NCBI RefSeq assembly: GCF_000143415.4
Contig: NW_003314323.1
Location: 62,001 to 126,000, forward strand
DNA length: 64,000 nucleotides
Direction of reading: 5' to 3'
From: Selaginella moellendorffii
Lineage: Eukaryota > Plantae > Lycopodiophyta
Both the position numbers and the translations under genes were made by a program. Numbering within the stretch: position 1 is the first letter of the stretch; every line of letters begins with the position of its first letter. Under the pieces are notes generated by a model. It searched no databases. It had not been told where the DNA came from and was given only the letters and a program-made list of their open reading frames with translations. Of the stretch, positions 14,514 to 57,994 are shown piece after piece.

Positions 14514-16682
14514 CTACTCGAATCGATCATCCGGGCCACTGGAACCATACAAGTTTGCCAGCAAAACGTATGAGAAGGTTCCTCCGGGATCCATCTCCAG
14601 CGCCTTCTCAGCTGCTCGGACACCAGCAATCTCATCCTTGCTCGCAGCGCAAGCCGCGAGCAAAATCCCCCACACAACGTCGTGAGCTTCGAAAGGCATG
14701 GCCGCCGCAATCCCGTGCGCCAAGATCAGCTGCCCCGACCTCGCAAAGATATCTATCACGCAGCAAAAGTGCTCTCTCGCGGGAGCCACGCCAAAGTCAC
14801 AGGCCATGCCAGAGAAGAGAGCCAGAGCTTCGCAAACCATGCCTCCATGGCTGCACGACGTCAACACGCTCGCGAGCGTCGTCTTGTCCGGCTTGAAACC
14901 AGCCAAGTTCATCACCCTCAAGAGCTGGATCGCTCGCCCCGATCGCGAGTAAGCTCGGATCATCGCGTTCCACGACACTGTGTCCTGGCAAGGCATCTCG
15001 TCGAAAGTAGTCCTGGCCTCTCGGAGGAAACCATTTTGCTCGTAGACCGTGGCCATAGCGTTCCAAGCCGCGACGTCTCGTCCAGGCATGCTCTCAAAAA
15101 CATCCCTCGCTTCGTCAAGAGACCCGTTTTGTCCGAGGCCCGAGACTACCGAGCTCCACGACACGACTTGTCTCTGCGGGATCCGATCAAACAGCGCCCT
15201 GGCCTCATCGAGGAATCCAAACTGGCAGTAAACTCCGATCATGCTGTTCCACGAGACGACGTCCCGCTGTGGCATCTGCTCGAAAGTCTTGCGAGACTCT
15301 TCCCAGAAACCGTTTAGAGCGTATGCCATGATCGCTGCGTTGAAAGACACAACGTTGAGCTGCGGCATCCTCTCCAGCAACACCATGGACTCATCAAACA
15401 GGCCAGCGCGAGCGAATCCGGGGACCAGACTCGTCCAAGAACACATATCCCTCTCTGGAAGCTCGTCAAACTTCGCCTTCGCATCGCCCAACGAGCCGCT
15501 CTGCGCATACGCTGCAATGACCGAGTTCCACGAGACCGTGTTCCTGTGAGGGATCTTCTCAAACACCGCCAGGGCTAGATCGATGCTGCAGCACTGCTCC
15601 CCAGCGATCACCAGCGCCGTCCACGAGATCACGTCCCTCTCAGGCATCTGATCAAACAGAAACTTCGACTCGTCCATATACCCATTCCGAGCATACGCTG
15701 AAACGATGGAGTTCCACGACACCAGATCCCTGTGAGGCATCCTCTCAAACACCGTTCTCGCTCGATCGACATCAAAGTCACAGAGAAAAGATCTAGCCAT
15801 CGTGTTCCACGCGCCGACACTGCGATTCTCCATAGAATCAAACGTCGATTTCGCTTCTAGCACACGGCCATTCTGGGCGAGGAGCAAAACCATCACGCAG
15901 CACGCCACGGAATCCTTCTCGCCCATCGCCTCAAACGCCACCCGCGCCTCGTCGATCAATCCACACTCCGAGAATGTGACGATCATCGCGGTGGCCAAGA
16001 CAGTGTCGTGCTGGGGCATTTGTTCATACACTCTCTTGGCGCCATAGACATCCCCAGCGCCGGCATATGCCTTGACCACGCCAGTCCACGCAAGAACGGT
16101 CAACTTGGGCATCCGGTCAAACAGCCACTTGGCATCCGCCGGTTCGCTGGCGCAAATGAGGCAATTCCAAGCAACCTCGTTCCACGCGGGCATCCGGTCA
16201 AAGATTTTCTTTGCGTAGCTGGCGCACTGCGATTGGGCGTAGCCCGTGACCATCGTGTTCCACGTCACTAGGTCGCGGTGGCGGCGCATGCTTTGAAAGA
16301 GTGTTCTTGCGGCGTCTAGATGCCCTCTCTGGGCATATGCGGAGATCATGGAGTTCCACGAGATTGTATCCGCGACCGGGAGCATTCGATCGAAGAGCTT
16401 CCTGGCCTCGCCCACGAATCCATTGCGGATATAGACGAAGAGCATGATATTCCAGGAGCGAGTGTCGGGGTCGTGGATCATGGAATCGAAGACGAGCGAT
16501 GCCGCGCGGAGGTCCGCGCAGCTGCCATACATGGCGAGGAGGTGCTCGGCGACGATCTTGGAGGCGGCGAGGCGGGGATCGCCCTGGATGTAGCGGTGCA
16601 ACCGCTTGCCCTCTTCCAGATCCTTGGCCTTGACGCAGGATTTGAGGCGAGAGAGGAGCTCCTCGGCCGAGAACTTTCTCAT
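14514..16682 (-). CDS. PLS-class pentatricopeptide repeat protein with tandem short (31-aa) motifs and truncated E domain
   Basis: Intronless. Repeated DVVSWNS(M/I)..AY..NG...EA..LFD.MP units. C-terminus REHFCCVIDIFARSG..WGILLAAC..EKALEMDP..SYVLLANLY, no DYW. Confidence 0.93.
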   Translation of the reverse strand: MRKFSAEELLSRLKSCVKAKDLEEGKRLHRYIQGDPRLAASKIVAEHLLAMYGSCADLRAASLVFDSMIHDPDTRSWNIMLFVYIRNGFVGEARKLFDRMLPVADTISWNSMISAYAQRGHLDAARTLFQSMRRHRDLVTWNTMVTGYAQSQCASYAKKIFDRMPAWNEVAWNCLICASEPADAKWLFDRMPKLTVLAWTGVVKAYAGAGDVYGAKRVYEQMPQHDTVLATAMIVTFSECGLIDEARVAFEAMGEKDSVACCVMVLLLAQNGRVLEAKSTFDSMENRSVGAWNTMARSFLCDFDVDRARTVFERMPHRDLVSWNSIVSAYARNGYMDESKFLFDQMPERDVISWTALVIAGEQCCSIDLALAVFEKIPHRNTVSWNSVIAAYAQSGSLGDAKAKFDELPERDMCSWTSLVPGFARAGLFDESMVLLERMPQLNVVSFNAAIMAYALNGFWEESRKTFEQMPQRDVVSWNSMIGVYCQFGFLDEARALFDRIPQRQVVSWSSVVSGLGQNGSLDEARDVFESMPGRDVAAWNAMATVYEQNGFLREARTTFDEMPCQDTVSWNAMIRAYSRSGRAIQLLRVMNLAGFKPDKTTLASVLTSCSHGGMVCEALALFSGMACDFGVAPAREHFCCVIDIFARSGQLILAHGIAAAMPFEAHDVVWGILLAACAASKDEIAGVRAAEKALEMDPGGTFSYVLLANLYGSSGPDDRFE

Positions 16683-16940
16683 CAAATCCTCGCTCTCCGC
16701 CGCGCATTTTGTCGATCATGGAACCTCCGGAGCTAAATTCCGATGTTGGGCGAGTGAGACTGCGCGTGTATGGCTGCTGGAATCCAGATCGAATAGACTC
16801 TCCATGCGCTCAAAGCGCCAGAGCCATGCCCTAAATTACTGTTCGAGCGGACGGACAATATTTAAATAGGTTTCCCGCAAAGTAGAGATCCACCGTCCGT
16901 TGTGGAGGAATTAGGGTTCTTGAGTAAATCGTGCAATGGA

Positions 16941-18548
16941 ATGGAATCGCTCCTCCACAATCACGCCTCCATCGACATCCACACATACGCCACTCTTCTC
17001 CAGCAATGCGGCGAGCGCCGGGCTCTCGGCGACGGCAAAGCCCTCCACGCCCACATCGCGTCGCGGCTGCCAAATCCCCCACTCTTCCTCTCGAATCACT
17101 TGCTGGGCATGTACGCCAAATGCGGCAGCGCCCGCGACGCGCTCGCGGCCTTCGATTCCATGCGCGATCGCAACGTTGTCTCCTGGACAACCGTCGTCAC
17201 CGCATTTGCCCACGCCGGGCATCCCACCGCCGCGCTGCGTCTCTTCCAGCGCATGCTCGCGGAAGGCATCGCTCCAAACAAGGTGACCTTCGTCGCTGTT
17301 CTTCACGCCTGTAGCGATTCCCGCGAGCTCCTCGATCCTGGGAGGATGATTCACCGCTGCTGCGAGGAGTCCGGCCTCGGCCGCGATCGCTCCGTCGCGA
17401 TCTCGCTCGCCAACATGTATGGCAAGTGCGGGGACGTCGACACCGCCGCCTCGATGCTCGATGAGATGTTCCAGCCGGATGTGATCGCCTGGAGCGCGGT
17501 GATCACTGGATTCGCCCAGCAGGGGCGGAGCTCCGACGCTCTCCATCTCTTCCGGAGGATGCAGCACGAAGGCGTGATCGCCAACAAGATCACGCTCGTC
17601 GCCACCCTCAGCGCTTGCACGGACAGCTCGTCTCTGGCCGATGGGAAGTTCCTCCATTCTTTGATCGTCGAGAAGAAGCTCGAGAGCGATGTGATCGTCG
17701 GCGGAGCTCTGGTCACCATGTATACCAACTGTGGAAGCTTGGACGACGCTCGCCGGGCCTTTGGAGCTGTGAGACGTCCCAACGTCATCGCCTGGACTGC
17801 CATGATCTCTGCCTGCGTCCACTTTGGAGAGCTCGACGAGGCGCTCCAGATCTTCCGCTTGATAGAAGCCCAGTGCCTGGACGATCGCGAGCTCCTCCTC
17901 GACGGTATAGTCTTCGTGCCGCTCATCAATGCCTGTGCTCGTCTCACGGATCTCTCCCAGGGCCGACGGCTTCACGCTCGGATCTCCAGCGATGGAAGCA
18001 TCAAAGTCGACGTCCAGCTCGGGAACGCGCTCGTCAACATGTACTCCAAGTGTGGCAGCGTCGAGGAGGCCGCGAGAGTTTTCGATGGGATGAAGTACCG
18101 GAGCACTGTCAGCTGGAACACGATGATCTCGGCGTACGCGATCGCTGGTCATAGTGAGAAAGTGCTGTGGATGTTTCACAGAATGCAGCAGGAGGGTGTC
18201 GAGCCGGACGAAGTGAGCTTTGTCGGAGTTCTCTCGGCTTGCAATGCTGCTGGGACTGTCGAGGAGGGATGCAAGTACTTCGGACTTTGCTGCGAGGAGT
18301 ACCGCATTTTGTTGGAGCCGCAGCACTTCGGGTGTTTGATCGACTTGCTCGGCCGGGTTGGATATCTGGACGAAGCGGAAAGGCTGCTCAGGAGAATGAA
18401 GGAGCCGGATGTCATGGCCTGGATGATGCTGCTGGACGCTTGTCGAATTCACAACGACTTGACACGAGCTAAAGCTGCTGCCGAGCGTGTTCTTGAGCTG
18501 GATCCTGGAAACAGTGCGGCTTATATCATGTATACTCAATCAAGTTAA
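16941..18548 (+). CDS. PLS-class PPR protein with truncated E domain
   Basis: P-L-S triplets (NVVSWTTVVTAFA / PNKVTFVAVLHACS / LANMYGKCG). E1 QHFGCLIDLLGRVG..AWMMLLDACRIH..ELDPGNSAAY. Head-to-head with the previous PPR. Confidence 0.93.
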   Translation: MESLLHNHASIDIHTYATLLQQCGERRALGDGKALHAHIASRLPNPPLFLSNHLLGMYAKCGSARDALAAFDSMRDRNVVSWTTVVTAFAHAGHPTAALRLFQRMLAEGIAPNKVTFVAVLHACSDSRELLDPGRMIHRCCEESGLGRDRSVAISLANMYGKCGDVDTAASMLDEMFQPDVIAWSAVITGFAQQGRSSDALHLFRRMQHEGVIANKITLVATLSACTDSSSLADGKFLHSLIVEKKLESDVIVGGALVTMYTNCGSLDDARRAFGAVRRPNVIAWTAMISACVHFGELDEALQIFRLIEAQCLDDRELLLDGIVFVPLINACARLTDLSQGRRLHARISSDGSIKVDVQLGNALVNMYSKCGSVEEAARVFDGMKYRSTVSWNTMISAYAIAGHSEKVLWMFHRMQQEGVEPDEVSFVGVLSACNAAGTVEEGCKYFGLCCEEYRILLEPQHFGCLIDLLGRVGYLDEAERLLRRMKEPDVMAWMMLLDACRIHNDLTRAKAAAERVLELDPGNSAAYIMYTQSS

Positions 18549-27597: not shown

Positions 27598-29463
27598 TTA
27601 AGTATCATTGCATCTCTGAAGTATTTCTGATAATGGCTTCCTGCAATTAAACTCAAACATTAGGTCGATTAGACCTTTGTGCAAATCTATGCTGGCATTT
27701 CTATATCTTTCAGTCTCTTTCTCCAAAGTTCCAGGCCTCTTCCCTTCGATGTATCTCTCAAGACAAATCTCATGAAAAGGCATCCATTTCTTAGTCACAG
27801 GCAAGAACAAAGGTGGCAGCACTTGGCACGAATGCCGGAATGGAATCCCCACGATCTCGTCGGGGAGAGGCTTGATCCTCCTGGCATACTCGAAAACTCC
27901 CTTCTTTCCCTTGATCTTCCAGCTGAGATCATCGCCGCCAAGCTTGTAGACGGGCGCTCTCCTCTGGAGCCGGTGCTTGGAAGCGTACATGATCGCCAGG
28001 GACGATCGCAGGACAAACGCCAGGAACACCGTGATCTTCTTGCGGTTGATCGCCAGGCGATAGAAGCCGGCCAGGAGATGGAGGAGATCCGAGACCTGGA
28101 GGTTGGCGTCCTCCTGGCGCGCCTTGAGCAGCCGCAAGCACGGATGGATCTTCATCCTCTGCCCGGCCGGGAGCTCCAGGATCTTCAATCGCGCCAGGCT
28201 CTCCACGCAATGCTTCATGCTGGCCACCAGCCGGATCTTCTGCTTGCTCACCTCCCGCGAGTTCTCTCGGCTCCGAGGAATTCGATGCTCGAGGGCCGCG
28301 TCGGCGCTGGCCTGGATCGTGTGAGCCAGGAATGGAACCTTTTGCGAGAGGTGGAAGATCTCCGGGAAGAGCTCGAGCTTGAGCTTGTCGCGGCAAAACT
28401 CGCGGAGCTTGGCTTCCATCGCGACGATCTCCTCGTCGGCGCCTTTGATCCCCAGGAGAAAATGCCCGGCGTAGCGAACGTACTCCATCGCCTGGCCCTG
28501 CCCCTGCGCGGCGTCGAATTCCTCGATCTCGCGCTCCACGAATCGATCGAGCTCGTCCAGGACGATGTTGAGCAGCAGCGGGCTCAAGATCTTGCAGCTC
28601 CCCCAGTGTGGCGAGTTCTTCCCCTCGATCGGTCCCATGGCGAGGAAGCACTTGAGCCAGAATGGTCGATCCTTCTCCCTCGTCAGGCGATGGATCTCTT
28701 GCTCCATCACTCGCCACTTCTTCTTCTTGGAGAGGAAGTACTCCTCCGGGACGATGGTGTCTCTCGTCTCCACCGAGAGGCCATCCCTGACGAGCTTGAC
28801 GATCAACTCGTCCTGGACGACGCGAGAGAAGATCTCCATCGCCACCTCCAGCTCCAGGCTCTCGAGGATCGACGTCTTGGCGGTGATGAACCACGTACAC
28901 TCTTGGAAGCTGCCAGTGATGTACTTGAGCGCTGTCATCGCTGTTCTTCCGGGCCGAAACGCGAAGGATCGATGCGAGAACCGCGCCTCAAACACGGGCT
29001 CCAAGATCATGAGAAGAACTTCCTGGACTACGCGATCCTGGAGCTCGGGAAGCTTGGTCGGGGAGAGGAACGCTGGAGTGAGATAGAGCGTGCCGGTGCC
29101 GCCCCAATCGTATCGCTGCGAGAGCACCGCTTCGCGCAGTGGATCCAGCTGCGCGGCCAGCTTGGGATGGAGGGGGCGATTCTTGGGGACGAAGAAATCC
29201 AGCGCCCGGCACGATCGCCAGTAGGCCATCTCCCACAAGACCTTGCTCTCCATGGCGCTGGACGCGTTCTTGAGGATCGAGTGCCTGTCCTGGAAGCCCT
29301 GGATCCAGTGCTCACCGCATAGCCGTGCGCAATCGCTCGCCCATCCGCCATCTTTGCCCTGAGAATGATCGATCCAGCGATGGCGGGATTGACGCGCATA
29401 CCTGCGGCACTGGAATGGAGGTGCGAAAGCTCGATTCGTCGGCCGCATTCCGGGGTCTGGCAT
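27598..29463 (-). CDS. nMAT: Nuclear-encoded group II intron maturase, type I (nMAT1/nMAT2-like; RT + domain X, no endonuclease)
   Basis: QDRVVQEVLLMILEPVFEARFSHRSFAFRPGR, WGSCKILSPLLLNIVLDELD, YVRYAGHFLLGI (degenerate YADD), domain X VLRSSLAIMYASKHRL..VYK. Intronless. Confidence 0.9.
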   Translation of the reverse strand: MPDPGMRPTNRAFAPPFQCRRYARQSRHRWIDHSQGKDGGWASDCARLCGEHWIQGFQDRHSILKNASSAMESKVLWEMAYWRSCRALDFFVPKNRPLHPKLAAQLDPLREAVLSQRYDWGGTGTLYLTPAFLSPTKLPELQDRVVQEVLLMILEPVFEARFSHRSFAFRPGRTAMTALKYITGSFQECTWFITAKTSILESLELEVAMEIFSRVVQDELIVKLVRDGLSVETRDTIVPEEYFLSKKKKWRVMEQEIHRLTREKDRPFWLKCFLAMGPIEGKNSPHWGSCKILSPLLLNIVLDELDRFVEREIEEFDAAQGQGQAMEYVRYAGHFLLGIKGADEEIVAMEAKLREFCRDKLKLELFPEIFHLSQKVPFLAHTIQASADAALEHRIPRSRENSREVSKQKIRLVASMKHCVESLARLKILELPAGQRMKIHPCLRLLKARQEDANLQVSDLLHLLAGFYRLAINRKKITVFLAFVLRSSLAIMYASKHRLQRRAPVYKLGGDDLSWKIKGKKGVFEYARRIKPLPDEIVGIPFRHSCQVLPPLFLPVTKKWMPFHEICLERYIEGKRPGTLEKETERYRNASIDLHKGLIDLMFEFNCRKPLSEILQRCNDT

Positions 29464-29543
29464 GGAAATGCTTAAACCCTAGAAACATTTAGAAAGACGA
29501 AAATATATCACATAGTAAGAGTCTGCAGAAGCTTGCATAGCTT

Positions 29544-29625
29544 GTCGCTTTGGCCGAGTGGTTAAGGCGTGTGCCTGCTAAGTACATGGGGTTTCCCCGC
29601 GAGAGTTCGAATCTCTCAGGCGACG
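29544..29625 (+). tRNA. trnS-GCT: tRNA-Ser(GCT)
   Basis: GTCGCTT/AGGCGAC acceptor stem, D arm TGGCCGAGTGGTTAAGGC, anticodon arm TGTGC-CTGCTAA-GTACA, long variable arm GGGG-TTT-CCCC, T arm GAGAG-TTCGAAT-CTCTC, oligo-T terminator downstream. Confidence 0.96.
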
Positions 29626-30135
29626 AGTTCTTTTATTCTTTTTTGCTTTGCTTAAGCAAACAGAATATGCTTGGAATTCTTTTTTGAAGATTATGCTTGG
29701 ATATTCTAAAATAAACAGTTGTTACTTATTTAAATTAATTTTGTATTTATGATTTATAAACATGTTATAAACTTTTTTAGTATATTTTTTTTATTCTACC
29801 AATGCAATAAAATTAAACAAACATGCTTATATTTTATCAATTAGAATAACACTGCTCTTAAGCAAACCAAACGTAATTTTTTTTCTTTTTTATGTACTAT
29901 TTTCTATTGCTAAACACGATGCATGCAAAGCTCAATAATATTCGAGAGATTTTTGCCTCAAAAAATGAATAATAATCAAGATTTACAAAATTGGCAGGCT
30001 TTCTTAGCAGAAAATCGCTTCCCTGGAACAAAAACACTGCGTGTAAGTTACCACCATAGAACGATTTTCGTCATACCTTCGCGGATAAGTTTACATTCGC
30101 TCCTTGCAGCAAATTCTTCCAGGAGGGATTTCGTC

Positions 30136-51998: not shown

Positions 51999-52890
51999 CA
52001 AACGAAGAATCAAAGCGATACAGCTGTGAGTTGGCTGTGGTTTCATACGCGATTGGAATGTTTAATCGTGTTAGCGATGTCAAAATCGACATCAGCCAGG
52101 ATGGTAGCGTGAAAAACAAGGCCTTGACACTTTTTTTTGCTCAAATGTGTCGACTGAATCGCGAGTCCACCAAGCACGGTCGGGCCAGCTCTCGATTTCG
52201 TGACCCCAACAACCGATCAAACTTTAAACTTTGTCGTACGGAAGTTCCCGAACTTTGCCGAAGAAACTCTTTTCACAACTTTTCAAAGTTTCAGCCATGA
52301 GCACGTAGCTGGCGCTGTTTCGCTTGTCCATTTCTCTGATGGCTTGGAAAGCGGCACTTCCCACTTGCAAATTCCCCACTTTCGACTGGCATCCAGCAGC
52401 GTCGACCAGATCTCTCACGCCACGGTATTGTTTTTGCCGAGAGAAAGCCATCCTCCAGCCGGTTTGCTCGTACGAGCATGTCAATCACGCAGTTGTAATG
52501 CTCCATTGCTGGTTTTAGTGGATGCTCTGGAGAACTCACGTTTTTCCTCAGAAAAAACAGATCCTTCCCTCGATCGACGATCCAGGCGTGGCTATAAGCG
52601 GCTAGAACCGAGAGAAGAGTGACGCTGTCCGGTTTGACACGCTCCTTTCTCATTGTTCCAAGGAAATCGAACATGCTTCGAGCATCGCCATTGTGGCTAT
52701 AACCCGAGGTGAACGAGCTCCGTCACTGGATCGCTTTTGTCGCTGGAAAGTCTAAAAAACCTGTTATGCGTTGACATCTGCCGTCAAAGTCGATTGCAGG
52801 GAAAACCACGGCACTGTCTTCTCCCAGCTCGGCCTTGCAAGTTTCCGAGTTTCCGATGTTCACAGCCGCCATCTTTGCGCAAGCTTTGTT
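51999..52890 (-). pseudogene. Degenerate partial duplicate of the 3' end and flank of the PPR gene at 55420-57888
   Basis: 52136-52890 aligns directly with about 55285-56065, with indels and frameshifts (KPAMEHYNCVIDMLVRANRL). 51999-52124 is the reverse complement of about 55170-55289. Confidence 0.9.
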
Positions 52891-52979
52891 CACAAATCCA
52901 GAACTGGACTTTGAAGAAGCTCATGAGCAAGGGATTCCGTAAAATTCAGAACTTACCCTTAAACGGCATACAACTCTAT

Positions 52980-55419: not shown

Positions 55420-57888
55420 TTAGCAACTTATCAAAGTTTCGGCCATTAGCACGTAGCTGGCGCTGTTCCGCTCGTCCATTCCCTTGATGGCTTGAAACGC
55501 GGCTCTTCCCACTCGCAAATTCCCCCACTTTCGACTGGCATCCAGCAGCGTCGTCCAGATCTCCACACTTGGCTTCCACGGCATTGTTTTTGCCAAGAGA
55601 AAGGCATCGTCTAGCCGGTTTGCTCGTCCGAGCATGTCAATCACGCAGTTGTAGTGCTCCATCGCTGGTTTTAATCCATACTCCGGAGAACTCATCGAGA
55701 AAAACAGCTCCTTTCCTCGATCGACGATCCCGGCGTGGCTACACGCGGCTAGAACCGAGAGAAAAGTGATGCTGTCCGGCTTGACACGCTCCTTTCTCAT
55801 TGTTTCAAAGAGATCAAACACTCTTGGAGCGTCGCCATTGTGGCTATAACCCGAGATGAGCGAGCTCCAAATCACTGGATCACTTTTGTTGCTGGGAATT
55901 TTCGTCACGCAATCAAACACCTGTTTTGCGGCGACCATGCTGCCGCATTTGCCGTAGAAGTCGATCGCAGCGCAAGCCACGGCACTATCTTCTCCCAGCT
56001 CGGCCTTGCAAGCTTGCAAGTAGAGTTTTCTTCCGGCGTCCACGGCCGCCATCTTTGCGCAAGCTTTGATCGCAGCAGCGTAAGTCGAAGCATTTGGAGA
56101 GTGGCCTTCGCGTTTCATGCTCGAGAGAAACGCGAGCGCCATATCTGGAGCTTGGCTCTGAGCATAGCCGGAGATCACTGCCGTGAAAGAGACCACGTCG
56201 TGAGAGGCCATCTGATCGAAAACCCGGTTTGTTCTCTCCAGGTTGCTTCCACCGCACTTGGAGTAGAGATCGAGCAGCGAACTGGTAACGAAAACGTCCT
56301 CTAGATCGTTCGTCCTCGCAGCTTGAGCGTGGAGTTCCATTGTTCTCCCTAGAAGCCACGAAAGTTTGGAAACTTTTCCACTGGATTCTTGTCTTTCTGC
56401 TGCTAAGCTCGAGCAGGCAGCGAGAGCAGCGACGAAAGCTCGAGCATTCGGTCTCAAACCGGCACATTGCATGCGCGAGAACAGCTCGAGAGCGATCTCT
56501 CCTTCGCCACCCTGTGCATATCCAAGAACCAGGCTCGTCCACAAGACGACGTCTCGTTTTGCCAGTGGAATCCTGTCAAAAACCCTTCGAGCCTCGATCA
56601 TGCTCCCACACTTGGAGTAGAAATCCACCAGGCTGCTGCTAACATATCTGTCCAGCTCCAGTCCGAGTTCTACGATCTGCGAGTGAATCAATCGTCCCTT
56701 CTCCAGAAGTTCTCGATGATCATCGTCGTCAACTTCCGGCCTGATTGATCTTCTCGTTGCAAGACTCGTGCAAGCAGCGATCGCGGCAACAAAGGTCCGA
56801 GCATTCGGTCGAATCCCACCTTCACTTTTCATCCTGCAGAAGAACTCTAGAGCTAGCTTTGCGTCGCCAGCCCGAGAGTAACCAAAGATCATAGCAGTCC
56901 ACAACGCAACATCAGCCTTTTGTGCTCCAACTCTCTGGAACACCCGACGAGCTTCTTCCATGCTTCCACACTTTGCGTACATGTCGACCAAACTGCTCGC
57001 CAAGAACATATCCTCCAAGTCGAGCCTCTTCTTCGCAGCGCGAGCGTGAATCCTCTTCCCGATCTCTAGAAACTCTTCTCTCGATCCAACAATTCCAGCC
57101 TTCTCAGCACCACTGGCGCAGGCGTTCAAGGCCGCTACGAAAGTCCGGCCATCCGGCTCGATCCCAGTTGTTTCCATCCGAGAGAAGAGGCCGAGAGCTC
57201 GATCGCCATCGCCACCTTGAACGTAGCTTCTGATCATAGCGTTCCAAGCCACCAAGTCTGGAGCGACCATCTTCTCAAACACCGAGCGAGCGCTTTGCAA
57301 GCTTCCACACGCCGAGTACATATGGACGAGTGCGCTGGCCACGAAATCGTTCGATGCTTCGTCACTGTCCAAGCGAGAATGGATCTCCATGCCGATCTCA
57401 AGCTGCTTGAGATTGCTGCAAGCCTTGAGCGCTGCGAGGATCAAAGAAATGCCTGGAGCTGATCCTTGTTCTCGCATTCTAGAGTAGAGTTTGAGCGTTT
57501 CTTGGTCTGATGGAAGAACGTTGGAGCGATCTTTGGTGCCGAGAGACTCGAGCTTGATTGGCACCCAGCTCGGGCAGCCGCAGGAATCAATCCACAGGCC
57601 TTCCCACGTGAAGACGTGGACGAAATCTGGATCCTTGGGAGATTTCTACACGGAAAAAGAGTCCTCTAGCGTGGTTCCTTCGAATTATCAGGCTATGGCG
57701 TGTTAGCTTACCTTGGATGATCGATTGTCCGACCACTTTGCTGGATCGTCGAACAGCTGCTGCCATTTGCGCTCTTCCGATCTGGCTGTGTGCTGCTCTC
57801 TCGAATTCCCAGGACCATTGTTCCTCCTCTTCTTCTTTGTGAAAGAAATCGCTCCGAAAGAAGGGAGCGAGGATGTAATGCCCTCCAT
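55420..57888 (-). CDS. PLS-class PPR protein (truncated E) with an N-terminal OSB-type PDF motif
   Basis: Exon 1 57888-57712 (59 codons), intron 57711-57646 (GTAAGC..GTAG), exon 2 in frame with the 714-aa PPR ORF. Junction reads WQQLFDDPAKWSDNRSSK|KSPKDPDFVHVFTWEGLWIDSCGCPSWVPIKL. Confidence 0.85.
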
Positions 57889-57922: not shown

Positions 57923-57994
57923 GCATCAGTAGTCCAACGGTTAGGATAATTGCCTTCCAAGCAATAGACCCGGGTTCGACTCCCGGCTGATGCA
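57923..57994 (+). tRNA. trnG-TCC: tRNA-Gly(TCC)
   Basis: Acceptor GCATCAG/CTGATGC, D arm GTCCAACGGTTAGGAT, anticodon arm ATTGC-CTTCCAA-GCAAT, T arm CCGGG-TTCGACT-CCCGG, TTTT downstream. Confidence 0.95.

What the first reader, a model, noticed from the sequence alone, without database searches (positions are those of the whole stretch)
55420..57888. PDF(OSB ssDNA-binding motif)-PPR fusion gene, hidden by a 66-bp intron
Seen: splicing GTAAGC(57711)..TAG(57646) joins a 59-codon exon in frame to the PPR ORF, giving W-x3-F-x2-P-x2-WSDNR-x2-K-x2-P-x2-PDF-x-H-x2-T-x-E-x-LW..P-x-WV. Knowledge: this is the PDF motif of plant organellar single-stranded DNA-binding (OSB) proteins, which binds ssDNA, while PLS-E PPRs are sequence-specific RNA-editing factors. 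Inference: a protein combining an ssDNA module with an RNA-recognition array could tether editing to nucleoids, transcription bubbles or R-loops, in a lineage with extreme organellar C-to-U editing. A KKKRR stretch upstream leaves the localisation open. I cannot confirm that this architecture is unreported.
Basis: partly seen in the sequence, partly recalled or inferred. Interest (0 to 1): 0.85.

Follow-up and report, generated by a model that had tools for sequence, protein, structure and literature searches.

The report
PPR editing factor with PDF module
This spikemoss gene for an organelle RNA-recognition protein (PPR repeats, no deaminase of its own) really does begin with the small 'PDF' single-stranded-nucleic-acid-binding module of plant OSB proteins, an old pairing also found in liverworts, peat mosses, clubmosses and a fern that I found in no paper and whose function is untested.

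Summary
Confirmed. The gene has exon 1 (57888-57712), a 66-bp phase-0 intron and exon 2 (57645-55420), and it equals the 800-aa NCBI Selaginella moellendorffii model. An HMM built only from OSB proteins matches each exon separately (E about 1e-6) at adjoining profile positions across the intron. The same intron lies at the same codon in three Selaginella paralogs, a liverwort, a peat moss, a fern and an angiosperm OSB2 gene.

The PDF-PPR architecture is old and widespread in seed-free plants and has no Pfam model. I found no paper on it. This scan noted it before at about ten other places in this genome, mostly on DYW genes.

This copy has 17 PLS motifs, E1 and a 14-aa E2 stub, with no DYW. 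Its PDF keeps the core, but two conserved lysines are valines, and about 95% of the closest Selaginella paralog models lack a PDF.

Best reading: an editing specificity factor with an accessory single-strand grip 5' of its RNA site. DNA or R-loop tethering is possible but unshown.

The parts
57712..57888 (-). Exon 1, 59 codons: N-terminal extension plus first half of the PDF motif
57775..57888 (-). 38-codon N-terminal extension, Ser/Thr-rich start then KKKRR (57837-57823); possible organelle targeting peptide, not tested
   Evidence: inference
57712..57774 (-). PDF motif, first half (helix, W-x-D-N-R-x-x-K), profile positions about 1-23
57646..57711 (-). 66-bp phase-0 GT-AG intron inside the PDF motif, five codons before P-D-F; same position in paralogs, a liverwort, Sphagnum, a fern and an angiosperm OSB2 gene
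57541..57645 (-). PDF motif, second half (PDF-V-H-V..LW..P-x-WV), profile positions about 24-56
57451..57540 (-). Linker and partial P-like helix before the first L1 motif
   Evidence: flexible linker in the paralog model, pLDDT <50
55567..57450 (-). PLS-type PPR array of 17 motifs: L1-S1-(P1-L1-S1)x4-P2-L2-S2; three L1 motifs are lengthened to 47, 51 and 50 aa
   Evidence: Pfam PPR_2 E 3.6e-67; motif split by hand
55465..55566 (-). E1 motif
   Evidence: (E_motif, weak)
55420..55464 (-). 14-residue stub of E2, then stop; no E+ or DYW in the three downstream frames

Best explanation
A nucleus-encoded, organelle-imported PLS-E PPR protein that specifies a C-to-U editing site and borrows a DYW deaminase in trans. 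It carries an ancient accessory PDF module taken from an OSB-type gene early in land-plant evolution. PPR arrays bind RNA N-terminus to 5', so the PDF would sit just 5' of the PPR footprint. There it would act as a sequence-independent grip on single-stranded nucleic acid, most simply the same transcript, raising affinity or keeping GC-rich RNA open. In this copy the grip is probably weakened or altered (two Lys to Val). SHOWN: gene structure, homology, conserved intron, purifying selection, distribution, lack of DYW. INFERRED: organelle import, a role in editing, trans-deaminase use, RNA rather than DNA as the ligand.
For: Splice and homology. Intron shared with OSB2 and with fusions in four seed-free lineages. 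A paralog's PDF model matches the OSB cluster at TM 0.92 and PPR clusters of 127, 63 and 57 members at TM 0.83-0.92. The PDF codons show purifying selection against paralog P0038: pS 0.81, pN 0.23 over 51 codons, lower than pN 0.35 in the PPR/E end. Canonical code residues at positions 5 and last, and a normal P2-L2-S2-E1 end. Many fusions end in a DYW domain. E-type PPRs recruit deaminases in trans in Arabidopsis (PMC9522420, abstract). Selaginella mitochondria have 2,139 sites and about 68% GC (PMC5654404). Volvocine algae have proteins made only of four PDF repeats, of the size of the RNA-binding protein RB38/RBP40, which is reported to open a stem-loop in the psbD leader (PMC3555230).
Against: The only PDF proteins with binding data I could read about, AtOSB1 and 2, prefer ssDNA over RNA (PMC4166229). 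I could not confirm by name that the algal four-PDF proteins are RB38. Only 4 of 75 other Selaginella homologs carry a PDF, so it is dispensable for the subfamily. Lys32 and Lys34 of the profile (85% and 93% in OSB motifs) are Val here. No target site, localisation or expression was tested.
Confidence: 0.45

Rival explanations
1. In this copy (and paralog P0038) the PDF no longer binds nucleic acid. It is kept as a protein-contact, oligomerisation or folding module, or is on its way to loss, and the protein works as an ordinary E-class PPR.
For: PDF-K-H-K became PDF-V-H-V-F with nearby Gly to Trp and Trp to Ser. Most paralogs lack the module. AtOSB2 is a tetramer (PMC6963530).
Against: All near-invariant Trp, Asp, Arg, Lys, Pro, Phe and His residues are kept, and the net charge (0) is within the OSB range of 0.7 +/- 1.9. 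Purifying selection holds. Val after PDF also occurs in the algal four-repeat proteins.
Confidence: 0.25
2. One reading: the PDF binds ssDNA (nucleoid, transcription bubble, displaced strand of an R-loop) and holds the PPR factor near nascent RNA for co-transcriptional editing.
For: The PDF motif of AtOSB1 is sufficient for ssDNA binding (PMC6963530). OSBs prefer ssDNA to RNA (PMC4166229). Group I OSBs carry a single PDF (PMC13393729). The motif descends from OSB-type genes.
Against: No direct evidence. Basic residues are lost in this copy. The module is absent from most editing-type paralogs. This protein has no deaminase to tether.
Confidence: 0.2
3. The protein is not an editing factor but a sequence-specific ssDNA-binding protein (PDF plus PPR on one DNA strand) that replaces the missing OSB in guarding organelle repeats against recombination.
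For: One survey lists OSB and RecA as not detected in S. moellendorffii (PMC4166229). Designer PPRs can bind ssDNA (PDB 5orq title). No DYW here.
Against: PLS-E architecture, many DYW-bearing relatives with the same module, and the fusion also exists in bryophytes and other lineages for which OSBs are reported.
Confidence: 0.06
4. Annotation artefact or dead gene: exon 1 is not spliced to exon 2, or the gene is a pseudogene.
For: No reads were examined. The E2 motif is cut short. A decayed partial copy lies 2.5 kb downstream.
Against: Profile halves abut exactly at the intron. The intron position is conserved across land plants. The NCBI model is identical. The 741-codon frame is intact, and most paralogs end similarly in or after E2.
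Confidence: 0.04

Closest known systems
OSB proteins (Arabidopsis OSB1-4; Zaegel et al. 2006, read only through reviews PMC6963530, PMC4166229 and PMC13393729)
   Same: The 50-55-aa PDF motif: profile match, same predicted fold in a paralog (TM 0.92), same internal phase-0 intron as a Drosera OSB2 gene.
   Different: No OB-fold. The PDF is N-terminal and single, and is followed by a PPR array. Two conserved lysines are valines.
PLS-class E-type PPR editing specificity factors
   Same: P-L-S triplets, P2-L2-S2-E1 end, canonical code residues, no DYW.
   Different: Extra N-terminal PDF module, three lengthened L1 motifs, and an E2 cut to 14 residues (common in this Selaginella subfamily).
PPR proteins with accessory domains (RRM, SMR, LAGLIDADG, NYN, CBS, SAP, MORF fusions; PMC9459714, PMC13386178)
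   Same: A PPR array joined to a second nucleic-acid-handling module.
   Different: PDF is in neither paper (0 occurrences). The described accessory domains are mostly on P-class proteins.
Chlamydomonas RB38/RBP40
   Same: Probably built of PDF repeats. Reported to bind U-rich RNA and open a stem-loop, guided by the helical-repeat protein Nac2 (PMC3555230).
   Different: A separate protein acting in translation. Its identity with the four-PDF algal proteins found here was not confirmed by name.

Membership tests
OSB proteins | PDF motif homologous to that of OSB1-4 | tested here: met
   OSB-only HMM hits both exons, E 5e-7 and 1.4e-6; reciprocal search retrieves named OSB1 and OSB2
OSB proteins | OB-fold (SSB-like) domain before the PDF motifs | tested here: not met
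   No SSB hit in either exon; only 38 residues precede the motif
OSB proteins | PDF motifs at the C-terminus | tested here: not met
   Motif is N-terminal
OSB proteins | ssDNA binding | not testable with these tools
   Core residues kept, two conserved Lys replaced
PLS-class E-type PPR | Array of P1-L1-S1 triplets ending in P2-L2-S2 | tested here: met
   (motif types assigned by hand from length and consensus)
PLS-class E-type PPR | E1 and E2 extension | tested here: inconclusive
   E1 complete, E2 only 14 residues; Pfam E_motif E 0.029, below cut-off
PLS-class E-type PPR | Organelle targeting peptide | not testable with these tools
   38-aa Ser/Thr/Arg-containing extension with KKKRR and four Glu in the first 40 aa; no predictor available
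PLS-class E-type PPR | Specifies a C-to-U editing site | not testable with these tools
   Organelle genomes and editomes not available in the tools
PPR-DYW deaminases | C-terminal DYW domain | tested here: not met
   Stop after the E2 stub; none in the downstream frames
RB38/RBP40-like proteins | Tandem PDF repeats without other domains | tested here: not met
   Single PDF on a PPR array; RB38 identity of the algal proteins itself unconfirmed

The most novel reading that the evidence does not exclude
PDF-PPR proteins are an undescribed, land-plant-old class of editing factors in seed-free plants that use an OSB-derived ssDNA module to couple RNA recognition to organelle DNA (nucleoid or R-loop). 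That would give a physical link between organelle DNA maintenance and C-to-U editing.
Probability: 0.2. Interest if true: 0.85.

Novelty: new variant of a known kind. Interest (0 to 1): 0.55.

Why it matters
PLS-class editing factors are described as targeting peptide, PPR array and E/DYW only. An extra nucleic-acid-binding module that has travelled with them since liverworts and vascular plants split has been missed. The likely reasons are that PDF has no Pfam model, an intron cuts it in half, and the OSB survey I read kept only proteins with an OB-fold. If the module raises editing efficiency on structured, GC-rich RNA, or links editing to organelle DNA, it bears on how hyper-editing lineages cope with thousands of sites. 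It would also be a ready part for synthetic PPR editors. This particular gene adds a DYW-less member with a naturally altered binding face, a useful contrast for binding assays.

Tried and rejected

P0001 came back as a hit and was only read and compared locally. It was never used as a query, folded or placed in a tree, so the fold and the PDF tree come from homologs.

Pfam gives nothing for the PDF motif. There is no solved structure by sequence or by fold (best Z 2.4; Foldseek found only the PPR helices). The Atlas feature search was blank.

Literature: no paper holds PDF domain/motif together with a PPR fusion. Two OSB or PPR surveys of 2026 do not mention it. Zaegel 2006 and Schwarz 2007 were not held, and Cheng 2016 and Gutmann 2020 were not read, so a passing mention cannot be excluded.

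The RB38 link stayed unconfirmed by name. Trees are weak. The PPR C-terminal tree does not group the Selaginella PDF carriers. The 61-column PDF tree does not reject a single origin (p-AU 0.71) but does not show one.

Rejected: chance motif, a Selaginella-only fusion, a hidden downstream DYW exon within about 500 bp, and membership in the OSB family.

Full report
OBSERVATION. On the minus strand an ATG at 57888 opens 59 codons to 57712. A 66-bp GT-AG intron follows (57711-57646, four in-frame stops), then a 741-codon frame ending at 55420. A search with the first 45 residues of exon 2 returned one protein, an 800-aa NCBI model from Selaginella moellendorffii named only as a PPR protein. It begins with the exon-1 product and ends with the exon-2 product exactly. 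The genome is therefore S. moellendorffii, and the annotators made the same splice but did not name the module. As the operators asked, I searched exon by exon by reference and left the joined step out; P0001 was never used as a query.

IS IT A PDF MOTIF? Of the 119 other best PPR homologs, 16 carry a whole or partial motif of the same pattern. They come from Selaginella, Diphasiastrum, Sphagnum, the liverwort Calypogeia and unnamed assemblies. A profile of 12 of these motifs scored each exon separately. Exon 1 covers positions 1-21 (E 8e-7) and exon 2 covers 23-55 (E 1.4e-8); the best other piece of the window scores E 0.07. The same profile found 1,179 cluster representatives among 1.84 billion proteins. 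These include proteins named OSB1 (Populus) and OSB2 (Drosera), and proteins with a Pfam SSB domain. A second profile built only from 131 motifs of 51 OB-fold proteins again hit the two exons at adjoining positions, E 5e-7 and 1.4e-6. An AlphaFold model of a paralog's motif (pLDDT 92.6; helix, small beta sheet, helix) matches an SSB/OSB cluster at TM 0.92 and three PPR or DYW clusters of 127, 63 and 57 members. It matches no solved structure. Pfam has no model for it.

THE INTRON IS ANCIENT. A phase-0 intron five codons before P-D-F is present in all three Selaginella paralogs checked (57, 70 and 54 bp). It is also in Calypogeia, Sphagnum jensenii, both PDF copies of an Adiantum PPR gene and both copies of a Drosera OSB2 gene. 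It is absent from one S. fallax fusion, Populus OSB1 and a green-algal gene. A phase-1 intron precedes the module in several of these genes, which would suit exon shuffling (inference). This is the best available evidence that the splice is real and that the module shares descent with OSB genes. A short tree places 22 of 26 fusion motifs together next to OSB-type motifs, and a single origin is not rejected (p-AU 0.71), but 61 columns cannot prove it.

ANATOMY OF THIS COPY. After a 38-residue extension come the PDF, a linker (flexible in the paralog model), 17 PLS motifs, E1 and 14 residues of E2. There is no DYW in the downstream frames. Ending in or near E2 is usual in this subfamily; 96 of 118 homologs lack a DYW-type end. 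The code positions are canonical (S,D; N,D; T,N; N,S), as expected for RNA recognition. The PDF keeps every near-invariant residue. However, the two lysines of PDF-K-H-K (85% and 93% of OSB motifs) are valines (1% each), and the second Trp of WWDNR is Ser (3%; also seen in a Diphasiastrum fusion). Paralog P0038 shares the valines. Against it the 51 PDF codons show pS 0.81 and pN 0.23, so the module has been under purifying selection. Only 4 of 75 other Selaginella hits carry a PDF, scattered in a poorly resolved tree; some models are N-terminally incomplete. The pattern fits an ancestral accessory module that is often lost.

MECHANISM. Shown: structure, homology, age, selection, no deaminase. 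Inferred: import into an organelle, site recognition by the PPR array, and a deaminase supplied in trans as for Arabidopsis E-type factors (PMC9522420). PPR arrays bind RNA N-terminus to 5' (own knowledge), so the PDF would lie just upstream of the footprint. I favour a non-specific grip on the same single-stranded transcript (0.45), which would help in mitochondria with 2,139 sites and about 68% GC (PMC5654404). That preference owes something to an earlier scan note (s1-402668) on RBP40. I found volvocine proteins of 357-406 aa made of four PDF repeats, of RB38's size, but could not confirm the name. RBP40 is reported to open a stem-loop when guided by a helical-repeat protein (PMC3555230). 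The valines keep alive a protein-contact or decaying role in this copy (0.25). Minor rivals are a sequence-specific ssDNA guard replacing the OSB not detected in Selaginella (0.06) and artefact (0.04).

COMPARISON AND NOVELTY. It is not an OSB (no OB-fold, N-terminal motif) and not a PPR-DYW. It is a PLS-E PPR with an OSB-type module. Full-text searches found no description. A 2026 OSB survey kept only proteins with both PDF and OB-fold and never mentions PPR (PMC13393729). A 2026 survey of editing-factor fusions and a Physcomitrium PPR review never mention PDF (PMC13386178, PMC9459714). The founding OSB paper and the main PPR classification papers could not be read, so a passing mention is possible. 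This scan has noted the same architecture at about ten other places in this genome, mostly with DYW. Those are AI notes and I did not count them as support; the distribution was re-derived here.

VERDICT. Real, old, apparently undescribed domain architecture; a new variant of a known kind; function untested. What this locus adds is the intron shared with OSB genes, a DYW-less member, and an altered basic face. Interest 0.55.

Noticed in passing
window 57923-57994 (+): A tRNA-Gly(TCC) gene lies head-to-head only 34 bp from the ATG, with a TATA-like stretch near 58005-57996 on the minus strand. The PPR transcript may start inside or antisense to the tRNA (inference).
   Followed up: no
window 51999-52894 (-): Decayed copy (about 82% identity) of the 3' end of this gene and its flank, with frameshifts and no PDF part. 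It reads 16 codons beyond the point where the intact gene stops, without DYW.
   Followed up: partly
window 57150-57010, 56802-56650, 56445-56296 (-): Three L1 motifs carry 12-16-residue insertions between their helices. Similar insertions recur in many Selaginella paralogs; my one literature search on it was blank.
   Followed up: partly
Atlas rows 5 and 7: Phage hypothetical proteins (187-199 aa; clusters of 54 and 122) match the PDF model at TM 0.65-0.70, a possible lead on the module's origin.
   Followed up: no
P0122, P0146, P0367-P0369: Proteins made only of PDF arrays occur in dinoflagellates (Effrenium, 9 copies) and volvocine algae (4 copies), outside the green-plant-only range given in PMC4166229.
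   Followed up: partly
P0086, P0138, P0160, P0189, P0200: Some fusions carry two or three PDF copies in front of the PPR array.
   Followed up: partly
window 27598-29463 (-), 29543-29626 (+): A maturase/reverse-transcriptase-like ORF (by eye, not searched) next to a tRNA-Ser(GCT) gene.
   Followed up: no
window 14514-16685 (-), 16902-18548 (+): Two further PLS-type PPR genes without any PDF signal.
   Followed up: partly
L001 6436-7030: The closest PDF-sharing paralog (P0038) also has tRNA genes nearby, three of them downstream.
   Followed up: no
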